From: Phaeosaccion multiseriatum
Taxonomy: Eukaryota; Protista; Ochrophyta, other classes
Assembly (NCBI GenBank): GCA_965112735.1
Contig: OZ218954.1
Location: 3,348,001 to 3,412,000 of the forward strand
Direction: 5' to 3'
Length of the DNA: 64,000 nt
A model generated the notes under the pieces. That model was not told the DNA's origin. It ran no database searches and worked only from the letters and a program-made list of their open reading frames with translations. Below are positions 3,206-62,891 of this stretch, in pieces. A program made the position numbers and the translations under genes. The first letter of the stretch is position 1. Each line of letters opens with the position of its first letter.

Positions 3206-6200
3206 TCGTGAAAGTCGAGCCCTCCGATATCGGGAGCCCCAGCCTGAATATGGACATCGAGGTTCCCCGCCTTAGCAGCAGCCTTAGCAGCCTTCTTGCC
3301 CATCTTGCCTGTACGCTTCTCCTTCTCCTTCTTCTTCTTCTCCTTCTCATCCCCGCCCCCCTCCCCTCCGTGATCGCTCCCAATAAAGAGTGGATTGCCC
3401 CCCGGGGTCACCACGCTGCTGCTCTTGGGGTGCCCTGCGGGGACCCCAAGCTTGCCCCCCCCCTCTCCTGCCCTCCCAAACATGCCCTCTTGGTCATCAT
3501 CAACATCCTCCCCGACCCCACTCACCAGCCCATCCCCTTCCGAGGAGGCGAGAGAGTACTTGCCACGACCATCTCCTCCTCCCACCGTCTTCCCACCACC
3601 ACCACCAGCAGCAGCAGCAGCAGCAGCAGCAGCAGCAGCCGCAGCTGCTGTCGCGGTCGCTGTATCACCAACTACTGCGGCACTGCTCCTCCTCCTGGCC
3701 GCAGATGCCGCAGAGCTGGCTCGTCTCTTGGCCACCATCTTGGGCACGTCAATTCCCACGGCAATGTAGGCCGTCTCGTACAAGAGAGACATGTGTCGCG
3801 ATCGAGGCTCCATCATGTCATCTCTGTGTGCCTCCGCCTCCCTCCTCTTGGCCAGCTCCTTCCTCCTCATCTTCATCCGCCACCCACACCCCATACACCC
3901 GCACCACACCACCAAGAGCACGCCCATACACACCAGCGACCACCAATACACGGGGTCTCCGAGCTGGTATGGATCTTGAGGTGAGCTCGCCACGCTCAAG
4001 TCCACATCCTTGCCATCCGCCGTAGTGGGGTCGTCGTTCGCAGCCTGGTTCTCCACGGTGACGGTTACATCAATGGCGTAGACTTGAACTGCGTCCGTTG
4101 AGACACCGATTCCGGACACGAGCTTGATGAAGTTGGGCCCCTGCACGAAAGCCGAGATGGCAGCGGATGCCTCTTGGCTGGGGTTGAGGCCTCCTCCTCC
4201 ACCTCCTCCTTGTTGCTGAGAGGAGGAGGAGGAGGAATCGATGTCGACATCGAGATTGACATCGAGATTACGATTGCGATTGCCGTTGGCTATGTCTGTG
4301 ATGGTGCCGTAGAAGGTCCGCTGAAAGGTGGCCGTGAGGTCGCACTCCTCTGCCGCCTGAGAGTGTGGCATCTGCCGACATTCGCAATACTCTGGATTAT
4401 AGCACACCTTCCCTGCCCGCAGATCTTCATACAAGAGGGAGCTGCAGTCCTCCGACGCGTGCGAAAGGCATGCGTCGTAGTCGAAGGCATCGCCGTCCCC
4501 GAACAAGCCCGTGTCTTGGTTCTCTTCCTCCGCTCGGTCCTCCTGTCGGTCCTCCTCCTCCTGCTCGAGCCTCCTCCCCCTCCCTCGCCTGTTACGCTCA
4601 CCACCTTCACCAATAGTAGTAGTAGAAGTAGTAGTAGTAGTGGCGGTGGTGGTGGTGGTGGTAGTAGTGCTGTTGCTGCTATCGTTTCGTCCTCCTGCAG
4701 TGACGGGGCTGGGGGTGGAACCATCACCGCCACCGCCGCCGGAAGAAGAAGAGATGAGATCCACCGTCTTACTCACGTTCATCACTTCGAAACCGTCGTA
4801 GCCCCATGCCTCTCCCAGCGACACCTCAAGCTCATGTGTGAAGTCGGCACTTTGCCTCCTCCCCAGCACCCGCACAGTGCCGTGCAGGATAACCTGTGTG
4901 TGTGTGTGTGTGTGTGTGTGTGTGTGTGTGTGTGTGTGTGCGTGTGTGTGTTTGTGTGTGTGTGTGTGAGAGTGCAAGGCGTAAAGCGCCGAGCAGGCCG
5001 TCAGTTGTCAGTTGTCAGAGGGAAGTGGGAAATCGATCTAGAGATTTACAAAACAATGGCCGAAACCTAACGACGAACACGTCGAACAGCGACAGAGATA
5101 TGCTTCATTCAAAGCCTGTTGCTGCCTAACGCTTGCCCACCTGGTTCTCCGCCGCAAAGTTGCTCGGGAAGCAAACGTCGTCGCCAACTTCTTCCCGTTC
5201 AATGCAAATGAGCGGCGCTGAAGCCGCCTCAGGGGCTGGCGTTGGAGCCGGAGATGTAGGGGCAGGCGTGGGAACCTCTGTTTGTTGTCGTACACGGGTG
5301 GTTCGGGGAAGCAGGGTTTAGAATGGAAGTTGAGGTGGTGAGGGGCATAGAGAAGGGGAACGGGAAGTGCAAGGGCAAGGGAAAGGGCACGCTCACCCGT
5401 TGGCGTCGAGGTGGGCACCGCTGTAGGCGCGGCGGAGGTCGGGGCCTCAGTAGCGAGCGCCACACAAGAGCTGTCCTCATCCACCACGGTCAAACTCAAG
5501 CCCGTATAAGGGACGAGGTTAGGTAAGTGACCCTCGGCGTCAAAGTAGACTAATGCGGAGTGCACGCTGACGTCATAGCTGACGTCAGAGCTGACGTCAG
5601 AGCTGCCCGCCCCGCCCCTCGGGAGGTCGTCGCAACCGCAGAAGTCAAAGGTGTAGTTGAGCTGGACCGTCTGCGCCTGTGTGTGTGTGTGCGTGTGTGT
5701 GTGTGTGTGTGTGTGTGTGTGTGCAGGTGTGTCTGTGAGTGCATGTGTGAAGGAAATCTCTCTCACTCTCCCCACATCCCTCCTCTTCTCTCCCCGAAGG
5801 ACCCTTGTCCATAAGTCAACCAACCAATCAATCAATCAATCAATCAATCATCAATGACTTACGAACCAAAGACCAAGCCCCATACTATCGTCTACCTGAA
5901 GAGAGCCCAGCTCCCACTCCAAGCTCCGTCCCGTCTCGCTCTCCAGCGTCGCAAACGTCCCTCCTGTGCTCGAAACCGCCACCTCTGCAATCCCGGGCAT
6001 CTCCTCGGACACCGACACGCTCAACGTAGCGTCATGCACACAGGGGTAGGTGATGGTCGTGCTAATCTCTCTCGCCAGCACCGAGTTAAGTGCAGTGAAG
6101 TTCTGTACGGAAAAATATTCATTGTCGGGGCCCGAGATGGCCTGTAGAGTGTCCTGGCTGACGGCGGTGGTGAGGCCCACGGCAAAAACTTCGATGCCGT

Positions 6201-60502: not shown

Positions 60503-62891
60503 CTACTTCCCCCGCCCTCCTCCCTCTTCTTTCTCCTCTTTATCCTCCTTCTCCTCCTTTTGCTGTCCTTGCTTGGCCCACGGCGCTCTCGTCCCCACCA
60601 GATCACCAACTGCTGCTGCTGCTCTACCGCCACCAACTGCTCCTGACGCCAACCCTCCCCCGGGAACAACCCCCCCTCCCTGTCTCCCCGCTCCCTCACC
60701 CACGCCTACACCCATGCCCGCACCCACGCCCGCACCCACACCCGCGCCCACGCCTGCATCCTTCGCCCAGGGAGCCTTCGTCACCACTGCCCCGCCGGGC
60801 CCGGGCATGGGAGGAGAGGCTGAGTTGGCATGCCGACTCGGAACCCACGTGCAGGGGAAGAGGGAGCCGAATTCAAAGTGCTGAATGACGGGGAGCTTGC
60901 CAATCACCTCTCCTTCATAGAGGCGGAGCAAGCCCGCGTTGACCCGGGTCCATGAGGGCATACCGGAAATGTCGTTAAGCATCGGGCACGCCTTTTGTGG
61001 GTGGGCAGGCGTGGGGCAGTTGGTGATACAGGAAGGAAGAGAAGGAGGAGGAGGAGGAGGAGGGGGAGGAGGAGGGGGAGGAGGAGGTGAGAGAGGTATC
61101 AATGAAGACGAGAGAGAGACAAGCACACAAACAGAGAATGGCGCCTACGTAAGCACACGTACCTCTCCAAAAGGCGCCCCGTGCTTGATGGTCTTGATGA
61201 ACTTGACGGCTTTGAAGTACAGGTACGCGTGTTGGTGCTCCTCCAGGACGGCATCGTCGTGGATCACAGATGGGCTGAGAAGGCTCATGTTGGGGGTTCC
61301 CCCCGGGGGGGGATGGTGGTCACGCTGATAAGGCTTCAGCAAAGGCGCGTCTGTATCACCAACTACTGTAGACCCGCTACTGCCCCTGCTGACGCCCGTG
61401 GCCTTCTGCTCCTCCACCTCTTTGCCTCCCCCCCCGCCCCCCTCCCCTCCTCCTCGAGTGCCACCGCCGCCACCACCACCACGAGCAGCAGCAGCAAAGT
61501 CCAGCTGAGAGCTGCCCCACAGGAAGGGCAAGCAGTGATAGTCATCCAGCCCCCACACCCCGTGGCTGCCTGCCGGCTCCAACATGTACACTGTCTGCAG
61601 ATGCCCCATGACTCGGAGGTAGGCAGCAAAGGCCTCGAGCACAACTGCAGTGAGGTCGGCAGGCTTGATCACCTGGGGAGGGAGGGGTTGGTTGGGTGGT
61701 TTGGGTTTGGTTGGTTGGGGGTGGGTGAGTGAGGTTGGTAAAATGACGTGTTTCTCTCCCCCTGTTTGCATCTCTTCTCTCATGTCTCTCTGAGTCCCTA
61801 TCTCTATCCTCCTCCCTCCCTCCCTCCTTCCCTCCTTCCCTCCCTCCCTCCATCCATCCATCCGCTCCCTCCCTCCCTCCCTCCCTCCCTCCCTCTCTTC
61901 CCCCCCCTCCCTCCAAGCACCTGTAGTTTGAATAGGCACAGAAGGAACACAACAAAGGTCGTCTCGTGGCCCGTTCCGTAGTCGATTCTCCTCTCGTTGC
62001 CAAAGCTCGTCGTGAGATAGGGGATGAGCTCCACGGAGGCCCCCAGAAGAGCCTCAGGGGAGGGAGGAGGAGGAGGAGGAGGAGGAAGAGCGGGGGAAGC
62101 ACTACTCGGACCAGCAGCAGAGTCAGTGTCGAGATGGAGAGGAGCAAGGAGGCAGTGAAAGAGTTAGTCCGGGGCAGGTATCTATAGTCTATGCACGTAC
62201 AGCAGGCAGCAGCAGGAGGAGGTGTGGGGTTTCAGGAAGCAGCCTCCTTCCCTCCCCATGAGCAAAAACAGGCAGGCACCCCCCCTCGCTTTACCACAAC
62301 CTACCCGATCTTCATGTCCTCCACAGCGCCGCTAGGAAGAATGGAACTGGCGCCCTCCTTCGACTCAGAAGCAACAGCACTTTTCTCCTCCGCCTTCTCG
62401 TCCTTCTCCTCCTGTCGCGACGCGTCAAGAGAGGTGGTGAGCAGTGAGGCCACCATGCGTGGGGCTTCCTTCACCAGGCGCTGGTGCCACGCCACAAAGG
62501 CCTTGTTGCCAAACCGCATCGGCTGCTGCACCGGAGGGATGTCGTCGACCCAGCTCTTCAGCTCCTCTAGAATGGTGCAAAGCTGGCCGACGACGGGGCT
62601 CGTGTGGTAGGAAGAGGAAGCTGCTGAAGCCGCTGAACCTGACCCTTCCCCTCCCTCCCTGCCCTCTCCCTCTCCTCCTCCTCCTCCTGCTGCTGCTGCT
62701 GCTGCTGCAGCTGCTCCTGTCTGTCGTGCTCGGCCCTTCGCAGCCTCATTGCAGAGCCTCACAAAGCGGAGCAGCTCGGCGTAGGTGGGCGACTTTGTGA
62801 AGGCTCGAAGATCCTCCGCCGTGAAGATGGCTCGCGCCGGGACCTTCCACTCTCCCTTCCTGCCGTCGCCTCTTCCACTCGGAGAAGGCAT
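60503..62891 (-). CDS. PTPA: Serine/threonine-protein phosphatase 2A activator (PTPA/RRD); exons 62891-62305, 62101-61921, 61672-61163, 60991-60503
   Basis: [92 protein letters not shown]. Confidence 0.96.

What the first reader, a model, noticed from the sequence alone, without database searches (positions are those of the whole stretch)
3660..61364. Highly iterated, frame-independent dispersed DNA motif (C/G)AGTTGGTGATACAG across unrelated genes
Seen: at least 15 exact TTGGTGATAC copies (+: 14776, 15105, 16397, 17180, 17678, 26801, 28209, 29128, 36788, 61020; -: 3662, 18569, 20584, 48427, 61353). Near copies: TTGGTGGTAC at 9863, 14634, 14890, 30175, 40375; TTGGTGATCC/GC/AA at 18434, 40600, 15906, 7970, 26864; minus-strand copy at 60600; 51626; a tandem pair at 49358-49378. 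A uniform model expects about 0.1 copies of a given 10-mer on both strands of 64 kb. The motif is read as QLVIQ, VGDT or VSPT depending on frame and strand, and it also sits in introns (28209, 51626, 61020) and intergenic DNA (48427, 49361), so it is a nucleotide signal rather than a peptide motif. Twelve of the 14 exact intragenic copies are in sense orientation. Inference: a genome-wide cis-element such as a binding site for a chromatin or RNA-binding factor, a eukaryotic analogue of HIP1/uptake-type iterated sequences, or a footprint of a site-specific mobile element. I know of no description of it.
Basis: partly seen in the sequence, partly recalled or inferred. Interest (0 to 1): 0.92.

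Follow-up and report, generated by a model that had tools for sequence, protein, structure and literature searches.

The report
Hyper-abundant 12-base insert in triplet repeats
One fixed 12-14-base DNA word is scattered about 30 times through this 64-kb piece of an algal genome, mostly inside or next to CAG-type triplet repeats and often inside genes; it looks like a tiny copied unit of a kind not yet described, and how it spreads is unknown.

Summary
TTGGTGATAC occurs 15 times (0.01 expected). The 14-mer AGTTGGTGATACAG occurs 11 times exactly, 6 times with one mismatch and 14 times with two; an order-5 Markov model expects 0.03, 0.3 and 1.7. It is in read-derived contigs of two samples, so it is not an assembly artefact. 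Depth there suggests roughly 10^3 genomic copies.

It is a DNA-level unit, not a peptide motif. It is read in several frames on both strands, always with the same uncommon codons.

The anatomy looks like an insertion:
- 12 bases (TTGGTGATACAG) follow [C/G]A[G/A].
- Flanks are triplet-periodic CAG/GAG.
- Where a copy abuts a CAG tract, both point the same way.
- The motif strand is the purine-rich one in 25 of 30 copies.
- Clustered copies lie 12, 15, 18 or 21 bases apart.
- No flanks are shared beyond the 14-mer, and there are no inverted ends.

I found it in none of 96 kb from five other stramenopile loci. Metagenome and viral scans gave only single, apparently chance hits.

My best guess, unproven, is short templated synthesis at breaks, primed from an ...AG end. 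A second word, GGGATGGCAGTGGATG, behaves similarly.

This scan already found the same motif on other pieces of this genome.

The parts
3660..3673 (-). exact 14-mer AGTTGGTGATACAG, read VGDT in a 626-aa stop-free stretch; shares the 18-base form CAGTAGTTGGTGATACAG with the copy at 61351
14774..14787 (+). exact 14-mer outside any CAG tract (flanks ggag / gagc), read VGDT
   Evidence: spanned by read-derived contigs with no differences
15103..15116 (+). exact 14-mer in the middle of a CAG tract, 8 units on each side, read QLVIQ
15904..15917 (+). one-mismatch copy (ATA to ATG) at the end of a (CAG)8 tract, read QLVMQ
16374..16408 (+). pair 21 bases apart: variant AGTTGGAGATCCAG, then CAGCAGC, then an exact 14-mer at 16395-16408
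   Evidence: contig depth here about 264,000 against about 450 for unique sequence
17178..17191 (+). exact 14-mer between (CAG)4 and (CAG)9, read QLVIQ
17676..17689 (+). one-mismatch copy that follows CAA instead of CAG; not in a CAG tract
   Evidence: spanned by contigs of X1 and X5
18212..18225 (-). two-mismatch copy (ATC variant), antisense to the long + ORF
18432..18445 (+). two-mismatch copy (ATC variant, final CAA) after (CAG)4, read QLVIQ
18567..18580 (-). exact 14-mer, antisense to the long + ORF (read VSPT)
20582..20595 (-). one-mismatch copy (follows CAA) abutting a CTG tract on the + strand, co-oriented with it; read QLVIQ on the - strand
26781..26906 (+). cluster: partial copy (..TGATACAG), one-mismatch copy at 26799, then three decayed copies with a 15-base period at 26862, 26877 and 26892; read as AVGDT-like pentapeptides
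28181..28220 (+). variant AGTTGGAGATGCAG at an apparent exon end, followed by GTACGG; exact 14-mer at 28207, 12 bases into the apparent intron, next to a GGGA repeat
29126..29139 (+). exact 14-mer, not in a CAG tract, read LVIQ in a 674-aa stop-free stretch; a two-mismatch inverted copy lies at 28994-29007
36786..36799 (+). exact 14-mer between a GGA-rich run and (CAG)3
40373..40611 (+). two copies, at 40373 (GTA variant) and 40598 (ATC variant), antisense to the 397-aa - ORF
48425..48438 (-). one-mismatch copy upstream of the CDKAL1 gene; exon or not was not determined
49356..49381 (+). two directly adjacent decayed units with a 12-base period (..GGTGATACAG TTGGTGATTGCA)
61018..61031 (+). exact 14-mer, antisense in an intron of the PTPA gene (- strand), about 30 bases upstream of the apparent exon start inferred from the protein alignment; the + strand here is purine-rich
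61351..61364 (-). exact 14-mer in frame (VVGDT) inside a 74-residue low-complexity segment of PTPA that yeast and Ectocarpus lack
9861..9874 (+). two-mismatch copy (follows CAA; GTA variant), read QLVVQ
14632..14645 (+). two-mismatch copy (GTA variant) after (CAG)3, read QLVVQ
30173..30186 (+). two-mismatch copy (GTA variant), read LLVVQ
51624..51637 (+). two-mismatch copy overlapping a GTGAGT donor-like site and followed by (CAG)3; could be a chance match

Best explanation
The motif is a copied DNA unit, not a peptide motif and not a part of a larger element. The unit is 12 bases, TTGGTGATACAG, placed directly after a [C/G]A[G/A] triplet, which gives the conserved 14-15-mer. I propose that new copies arise at DNA breaks or nicks in purine-rich triplet repeats (CAG, GAG). 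A 3' end finishing in ...AG pairs over 2-3 bases with a template that carries the unit. It is then extended by a fixed 12 bases and rejoined. The new ...CAG end fits straight back into a CAG tract. The template could be another genomic copy or an RNA, and the enzyme is unknown. Because 12 is a multiple of 3, copies in exons are tolerated in five of six frames. Secondary spread between nearby CAG tracts by homology-guided repair would explain the local clustering. What is shown: the abundance, the DNA-level identity, the anatomy and target context, the orientation rule, the absence of a larger element, and the apparent restriction to this lineage. What is inferred: that the unit is an insertion (no empty site was seen) and the whole mechanism.
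For: Excess over chance. It is the top non-simple word of the window. Present in unitigs of two samples, with depth at the CAG-embedded copy about 264,000 against about 450 for unique sequence, implying roughly 10^3 copies. Same rare codon set in all QLVIQ copies (joint usage 0.02), and use of other frames and the other strand. Sharp edges: nothing is shared outside the 14-mer except triplet periodicity. In non-repeat contexts exactly one CAG follows the unit. The triplet on the left is CAG 10, GAG 5, TAG 2, AAG 0 against background shares of 26, 47, 7 and 20 % (p=0.007), and an SAGSAG context occurs in 9 of 17 copies against 16 % of AG sites (p=4e-4). Three copies follow CAA but still end in their own CAG, which suggests the right-hand CAG belongs to the unit and the left-hand triplet to the target. 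CAG tracts cover 1.25 % of the window, yet 9 of 38 tracts abut a copy, always co-oriented. The motif strand is purine-rich in 25 of 30 copies (p=3e-4), including the antisense copy in the PTPA intron. Spacings of 12, 15, 18 and 21 bases in clusters are what repeated insertion at triplet boundaries would give. The range from exact to two-mismatch copies, and recurrent variants (A to G at position 9 five to seven times, A to C at position 11 four times), suggest ongoing copying from variant donors. In PTPA the copy lies in a 74-residue segment where yeast and Ectocarpus have 5 residues. No copy in 96 kb of five other stramenopile loci. Precedents for short templated patches at breaks: telomerase-made interstitial repeats (PMC2246262, PMC8537989) and polymerase-theta templated insertions (PMC2895639).
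Against: No empty site, insertion polymorphism or de novo event was seen; one search showed no indels, and the four main runs are one sample. No template RNA, reverse transcriptase or other enzyme was identified. Known templated repair (polymerase theta) copies variable local sequence of variable length, not one fixed word. By earlier notes of this scan, which I did not test, the telomere repeat is TTAGGG with CCAGG arrays, so the ordinary telomerase template cannot be the source. Half of the best copies (9 of 17) lack a flanking repeat, so homology-guided conversion alone cannot explain them. It is unclear why one or two words would dominate. The recurrent variants could be mutation hotspots instead of donor subfamilies. 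With 31 copies in one window, all statistics are small-sample.
Confidence: 0.35

Rival explanations
1. Trace of a larger mobile element. Either an extremely 5'-truncated copy of a retroelement that targets CAG repeats and ends in ...TTGGTGATA(CAG)n, or a stereotyped excision scar of a DNA transposon that targets AG or CAG.
For: Non-LTR elements that target microsatellites and carry the same repeat as a tail are well known (PMC3812793, PMC4640811). Annealing of a tail to the target would explain the CAG preference, the co-orientation and the AG microhomology on the left.
Against: No copy in the window extends further left with shared sequence, so there is no graded truncation series. In non-repeat contexts exactly one CAG follows the unit rather than a variable tail. 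Inverted pairs share no internal sequence and the 10-base core has no inverted symmetry, so it is neither a MITE nor a scar of a transposon with inverted ends. The left triplet does not co-vary with the right-hand CAG, so there is no 3-base target duplication. I did not screen the window systematically for a reverse transcriptase, and none appeared among the 20 ORFs scanned.
Confidence: 0.2
2. A functional cis-element kept by selection. This would be a binding site on DNA or RNA for an abundant sequence-specific factor, for instance one that marks, stabilises or regulates transcripts or DNA rich in triplet repeats. Copies would be generated by any mechanism and then retained.
For: The core positions 3-8 (TTGGTG) vary less than positions 9 and 11 in diverged copies. 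There is a strong sense-strand and purine-strand bias. Density is very high inside one gene, with 13 of 31 copies between 14.6 and 18.6 kb. An interruption is expected to stabilise CAG tracts; this rests on general knowledge of interrupted triplet repeats and was not tested.
Against: A 14-base exact word cannot arise repeatedly by point mutation at one copy per 2 kb, so a copying mechanism is needed anyway. Copies occur in both orientations relative to genes, and in exons and an intron. The sense bias is explained by the orientation of CAG and purine-rich tracts. There is no conservation evidence, since no close relative was available.
Confidence: 0.15
3. Pure homology-driven spread. One interruption inside a CAG tract is copied to other CAG tracts by ectopic gene conversion or template switching between repeats, with no dedicated insertion step.
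For: There is enrichment in and co-orientation with CAG tracts, spacing in multiples of three, strong local clustering within one gene and recurrent variant forms.
Against: Nine of the 17 best copies have no CAG tract on either side and only 2-5 bases of possible homology, for example 14774, 28207, 29126, 61018 and 61351. Twenty-nine of 38 pure CAG/CTG tracts carry no copy, including the longest tracts of 17 and 13 units.
Confidence: 0.15
4. Peptide-level motif (QLVIQ in polyQ proteins), a 13-base GT..AG micro-intron, or an assembly or adapter artefact.
For: QLVIQ is the commonest reading. Several variants are synonymous or conservative in that frame: CAA, ATC, and I to V or M. GTTGGTGATACAG does start with GT and end with AG.
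Against: There are five different readings on two strands with identical uncommon codons. The fourfold-degenerate position 8 hardly varies while position 11 does, which is not the pattern of selection on a peptide. Removing 13 bases would shift the frame between two conserved PTPA blocks that are in one frame with the copy retained, although no RNA data were available. The word is present in unitigs of two samples and studies, and I know of no adapter with this sequence (from my own knowledge; not checked with a tool).
Confidence: 0.03

Closest known systems
Short interstitial telomeric repeats inserted by telomerase during double-strand-break repair (PMC2246262, PMC8537989)
   Same: Short units templated by a fixed template are added at internal break sites, primed by a few bases of microhomology, without target duplication and without a larger element. 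The unit has a terminal redundancy (CAG...CAG), like a template with an alignment region.
   Different: The word is not the telomere repeat; earlier notes, untested, give TTAGGG plus CCAGG for this genome. Mostly a single unit is inserted rather than a run. There are roughly 10^3 copies with a strong preference for CAG/GAG repeats. No RNA template or enzyme is known.
Microsatellite-targeting non-LTR retrotransposons such as Dong, Waldo and Kibi (PMC3812793, PMC4640811)
   Same: Insertion into a specific simple repeat in a fixed orientation, guided by pairing between the element's tail and the target.
   Different: Those are kilobase elements with ORFs and a range of 5' truncations. Here only 12 bases are ever shared, with exactly one CAG after the unit in non-repeat sites.
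Polymerase-theta templated insertions at end-joining junctions (PMC2895639)
   Same: Insertions of 5-30 bases copied from a template after annealing at 2-4 bases of microhomology, with no target duplication.
   Different: Known events copy variable, usually nearby sequence. They do not yield one identical word at about a thousand loci.
Bacterial iterated short sequences (HIP1, DNA uptake sequences, REP)
   Same: A short exact word far above chance, spread through coding and non-coding DNA regardless of frame.
   Different: This is a eukaryote. The word is not palindromic, is tied to triplet repeats, and looks like an insertion that adds codons rather than a word accommodated by synonymous choice. 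The known roles of the bacterial words (uptake, repair) have no evident counterpart here.
Stabilising interruptions of triplet repeats (for example CAA or CAT in polyQ genes)
   Same: A non-repeat stretch breaking a pure CAG tract while keeping the reading frame.
   Different: Known interruptions are single-codon variants that arise locally. This is a 9-12-base foreign word, identical across unrelated loci and also present outside repeats.

Membership tests
Peptide motif / protein repeat | One reading frame; codons free to vary at synonymous sites | tested here: not met
   Read as QLVIQ, VGDT, VSPT, CITN or LYHQL. All copies use TTG-GTG-ATA, joint usage about 0.02.
TIR DNA transposon / MITE | Terminal inverted repeats enclosing a conserved internal sequence | tested here: not met
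   Five inverted pairs of copies share only microsatellite and the motif itself. The 10-base core has no inverted symmetry.
TIR DNA transposon / MITE | Target-site duplication that varies with the target | tested here: not met
   The left triplet varies (CAG, GAG, TAG, CAA) while the right is always CAG. Only a constant AG could be a duplication.
Non-LTR retrotransposon / SINE, 5'-truncated copies | Graded series of copies extending to different lengths into a common upstream sequence | tested here: not met
   No non-simple 9-mers are shared in 80 bases to the left of the copies beyond chance pairs. Only 31 copies in one window were examined.
Non-LTR retrotransposon / SINE, 5'-truncated copies | Full-length source element with a reverse transcriptase elsewhere in the genome | not testable with these tools
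   Only this window is readable. Notes of the scan mention RLE elements at CA repeats, untested.
Micro-/minisatellite | Head-to-tail tandem array | tested here: not met
   Almost all copies are solitary. There is one adjacent pair (49356) and one decayed triple with a 15-base period (26862).
Interstitial telomeric insertion | Inserted sequence equals the telomere repeat | tested here: inconclusive
   The word is unrelated to TTAGGG-type repeats. The telomere repeat of this genome is known to me only from earlier notes.
Spliceosomal micro-intron | Removed from mRNA; GT..AG ends | tested here: inconclusive
   GT..AG ends exist for a 13-base stretch, but removing it would break the frame between conserved PTPA blocks. 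No RNA run was found.
HIP1 / uptake-sequence type iterated word | Word accommodated in genes without adding length; palindromic or with a known uptake or repair role | tested here: not met
   In PTPA the copy lies in an added 74-residue segment. The word is not palindromic. Function is not testable here.
Sequencing / assembly artefact | Absent from independent raw data | tested here: not met
   Unitigs of X1, X4 and X6 and of X5 (another sample and study) carry the copies.

The most novel reading that the evidence does not exclude
The alga has a dedicated RNA-templated 'writer': a telomerase-like or retroelement-derived reverse transcriptase with a short fixed template. It adds one 12-base patch (TTGGTGATACAG) to 3' ends finishing in ...AG at broken triplet repeats genome-wide. 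This would make a new class of ultra-short retro-insertion that also adds codons to hundreds of proteins. The second word, GGGATGGCAGTGGATG, would be the product of a second template.
Probability: 0.2. Interest if true: 0.93.

Novelty: categorically new. Interest (0 to 1): 0.74.

Why it matters
If the word is a 12-base unit that is actively copied into triplet repeats, it would be a class of repeat smaller than any known mobile element. It would point to an unknown way of writing short fixed sequences into a genome at breaks. It would also be a genome-wide source of in-frame protein variation, adding QLVIQ or VGDT to unrelated proteins, and a natural interrupter of expandable CAG tracts. The idea is directly testable in culture by inducing a break in a CAG tract and looking for the patch. 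At the least, annotators of this genome need to know that this word, and a second one, are not peptide motifs or regulatory sites in the usual sense.

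Tried and rejected
1. Literature. A full-text search for four forms of the word found only unrelated primers. A general search for short dispersed inserts in stramenopile microsatellites found nothing relevant.
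2. Rfam and tRNA scans of the window gave nothing. A permissive Rfam scan around one copy gave only noise.
3. RNA evidence. No RNA run was offered. The runs laid behave like DNA unitigs, showed no indel at any copy and gave no empty site.
4. A metagenome scan with the 21-mer gave one single-copy hit, probably bacterial. A viral scan with the 18-mer gave 14 single-copy hits, of which 2 and 7 are near-identical copies of one stretch each. I read both as chance hits.
5. Close relatives. CDKAL1 and PTPA exons found nothing closer than about 70-80 % identity in conserved blocks, so no comparison of orthologous empty sites was possible. A polyQ+LVIQ protein query returned nothing, probably because of composition filtering.
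6. MITE idea: rejected. Shared flanks or a longer element: none. Three-base target duplication: rejected.
7. True telomerase as the source: set aside, because notes give TTAGGG/CCAGG telomeres (untested).
8. Two resemblances recalled from memory, neither tested. The reverse complement ends like a tRNA 3' end (...CACCA), as a primer-binding site would. The word also resembles the conserved U6 snRNA stretch UUGGAACGAUACAGAG. No tRNA or U6 gene is in the window. I give these little weight.
9. Selection on the peptide from the variant spectrum: not demonstrable. The pattern fits transition bias or donor variants.

Full report
**1. The observation**

Dinucleotide-preserving shuffles expect 0.01.

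Aligning the copies shows that the conserved word is longer: AGTTGGTGATACAG, usually preceded by C or G.
- It occurs 11 times exactly, 6 times with one mismatch and 14 times with two.
- An order-5 Markov model of the window expects 0.03, 0.3 and 1.7.
- About 29 of the 31 copies are therefore real, roughly one per 2 kb.
- It is the most over-represented word of the window that is not a simple repeat.

**2. Not an artefact, and genome-wide**

I laid Logan unitigs of four runs on 14400-19000.
- Pieces from X1, X4 and X6 (one sample) span the copies at 14632, 14774, 17676 and 18567 without a difference.
- A piece from X5, another sample and study, spans 17676.
- At the CAG-embedded copy (16385-16416), the summed contig depth is about 264,000 in X1, against about 450 on unique stretches. 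Dozens of listed contigs run into unrelated sequence on either side.
- Allowing for the short overlap, that means roughly 10^3 genomic copies of the CAG-flanked form. This is a rough figure.

No indel polymorphism was reported at any copy. None of the runs could be shown to be RNA.

**3. DNA-level unit, not a peptide**

Depending on frame and strand the word is read as QLVIQ, VGDT, VSPT, CITN or LYHQL. Only one of the six frames has a stop (TGA).

All QLVIQ copies use TTG, GTG and ATA. In the window's long ORFs these make up 22 %, 55 % and 17 % of Leu, Val and Ile codons, a joint chance of about 0.02 per copy. Identity by descent of the DNA is the only reasonable reading.

**4. Anatomy**

- **Flanks.** Outside the 14-mer nothing is conserved except a triplet periodicity. 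To the left the flank reads (C/G)AG(C/G)AG, and to the right CAGCAG.
- **Left triplet.** Immediately before TTGG it is CAG in 10, GAG in 5 and TAG in 2 of the 17 best copies, and never AAG. Among all NAG sites, GAG is nearly twice as common as CAG (p=0.007). An SAGSAG context occurs in 9 of 17 copies against 16 % of AG sites (p=4e-4).
- **Unit boundaries.** Three copies follow CAA yet still end in their own CAG. In non-repeat contexts exactly one CAG follows the core. The simplest parsing is a 12-base unit, TTGGTGATACAG, placed after a [C/G]A[G/A] triplet. A 10-base insert with an AG duplication cannot be excluded.
- **CAG tracts.** Pure CAG/CTG tracts of four or more units cover 1.25 % of the window. 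Nine of 38 abut a copy, always with the word on the CAG strand.
- **Strand rule.** The word lies on the purine-rich strand in 25 of 30 informative copies (p=3e-4). This includes the copy at 61018, which is antisense in an intron of a minus-strand gene. It follows from this strand rule, because coding strands here are purine-rich.
- **Spacing.** Clustered copies are 12 (49356), 15 (26862/26877/26892), 18 (26781/26799) and 21 (16374/16395) bases apart. Repeated insertion at triplet boundaries would produce this.
- **Local clustering.** Thirteen of the 31 copies lie between 14.6 and 18.6 kb in one very repetitive gene.
- **Divergence.** Diverged copies are not randomly diverged. A to G at position 9 recurs five to seven times, and A to C at position 11 four times. 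The fourfold-degenerate position 8 changes once. This fits variant donors or mutation hotspots better than selection on a peptide.

**5. What it is not**

- Five inverted pairs of copies share no internal sequence, and the core has no inverted symmetry. It is therefore neither a MITE nor a scar of a transposon with inverted ends.
- No copies share upstream sequence, so there is no truncation series of a longer retroelement in this window.
- It is not a tandem repeat.
- There is no tRNA or Rfam family in the window.
- A 13-base GT..AG micro-intron is unlikely. In the PTPA gene the conserved blocks ...[27 protein letters not shown] and LSPSVIHDDAVLEE... are in one frame with the copy retained. 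Without RNA I cannot exclude that part of the intervening segment is itself intronic.

**6. A conserved-gene example**

The PTPA (PP2A activator) gene runs on the minus strand from about 62849 to 60761.
- Between GSSQL and LSPSV, yeast Ypa2 (2ixn_A) and Ectocarpus have 5 residues.
- This alga has 74 residues, glycine- and glutamate-rich, with the copy at 61351 read as VVGDT.
- The word therefore sits in lineage-specific, low-complexity added sequence.

**7. Distribution**

- No copy with up to two mismatches occurs in 96 kb around CDKAL1 or PTPA orthologues. These came from Chrysoparadoxa, an ochromonad, Ectocarpus and two metagenomic eukaryote contigs. This window carries about 10 copies per 20 kb.
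- The 21-mer with CAG flanks has one single-copy hit in the metagenome collection.
- The 18-mer has 14 single-copy hits in viral contigs, of which 2 and 7 are near-identical copies of one stretch each.
- No close relative of the alga was found, so orthologous empty sites could not be examined.

**8. Mechanism**

These features together point to a copy-and-paste process: sharp fixed edges, a dependence on a 2-3-base anchor (AG or CAG), the strand rule, tolerance of non-repeat sites, clustered re-insertion, and the lack of any larger element.

I commit, at about 0.35, to short templated synthesis at breaks or nicks in purine-rich triplet repeats.
- A 3' end finishing in ...AG pairs with a template carrying the unit.
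- It is extended by 12 bases and rejoined.
- Homology-guided repair between nearby CAG tracts then adds secondary spread.

Known processes work like this in part. Telomerase inserts telomeric units at internal breaks (PMC2246262, PMC8537989). Polymerase theta makes templated insertions (PMC2895639). Retroelements that target microsatellites use tail-to-target pairing (PMC3812793, PMC4640811). None of them gives one fixed non-telomeric word at about a thousand sites.

Nothing here shows the template, the enzyme or a single empty site, so the mechanism is inference. Rivals are given separately:
- a trace of a larger element (0.2);
- a selected binding site (0.15);
- pure gene conversion between CAG tracts (0.15), weakened by the nine best copies that have no flanking tract;
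- peptide motif, micro-intron or artefact (0.03).

**9. A second word**

GGGATGGCAGTGGATG is 1.6 units of the decamer GGATGGCAGT. It has 4 exact copies and 13 within two mismatches, against 0.11 expected. It occurs solitary and in short arrays, on both strands and inside ORFs. Contigs also pile up and break at its copy at 16487-16502. It has the same X-Y-X shape: GGATG-GCAGT-GGATG, compared with CAG-TTGGTGATA-CAG. This suggests a general process that disperses 10-12-base units in this genome.

**10. Relation to earlier work of this scan**

The same word was already reported and followed up on other pieces of this genome (s1-331371, s1-326278, s1-331406). It was also noted by readers in s1-336322, s1-342276 and s1-343397. 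The decamer was noted in s1-336565. My results agree with those reports.

What this report adds:
- the parsing as a 12-base unit after an SAR triplet;
- the purine-strand rule;
- the target statistics;
- the recurrent variants;
- the PTPA example;
- the read-level check;
- the negative controls in other stramenopiles, metagenomes and viruses.

Noticed in passing
window 14941-14956(-), 16487-16502(+), 59098-59170(+), 59560-59575(+), 48930-48965(-), 27771-27786(+): A second hyper-iterated short word, GGGATGGCAGTGGATG (1.6 units of the decamer GGATGGCAGT). It has 4 exact copies and 13 within two mismatches against 0.11 expected. It occurs solitary and in short arrays, on both strands and inside ORFs. 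Read-derived contigs also pile up and break at 16485/16503. It has the same X-Y-X shape as the main motif.
   Followed up: partly
window 60761-62849 (-): PTPA (PP2A phosphatase activator) gene with at least four coding blocks. A 74-residue Gly/Glu-rich low-complexity segment lies between the conserved GSSQL and LSPSVIH blocks, where yeast and Ectocarpus have 5 residues.
   Followed up: yes
window 45107-47397 (-): CDKAL1-type tRNA methylthiotransferase gene (radical SAM plus UPF0004) in at least five exons. The best relatives are only about 65-73 % identical, so no close relative of this alga is in the protein collections.
   Followed up: partly
window 13509-18982 (+): Two very long overlapping stop-free stretches (964 and 908 aa) made almost entirely of poly-E, poly-G, poly-Q and poly-S runs. 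They hold 13 of the 31 motif copies. It is unclear whether this is one gene and whether it is expressed.
   Followed up: no
window 6991-7565, 10683-11161, 12482-12837, 13645-14034: Extreme load of simple repeats: 12.7 % of the window is perfect microsatellite of five or more units. Examples are a 575-base (GGA)192, (CCTC)120, (CAAC)90 and (AGGAGG)65.
   Followed up: no
window 3656-3673(-) and 61351-61368(-): Two exact copies share an 18-base form, CAGTAGTTGGTGATACAG (an extra AGT before the word), both read AVVGDT. This may be a variant donor.
   Followed up: no
window 43138-44163(-), 50443-51402(+), 58045-59097(+), 63105-63998(+), 5854-6276(-): Other recognisable domains in the window: WRKY19-type zinc finger, calponin-homology domain, F-box, PAN domain and a VWA fragment.
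   Followed up: no
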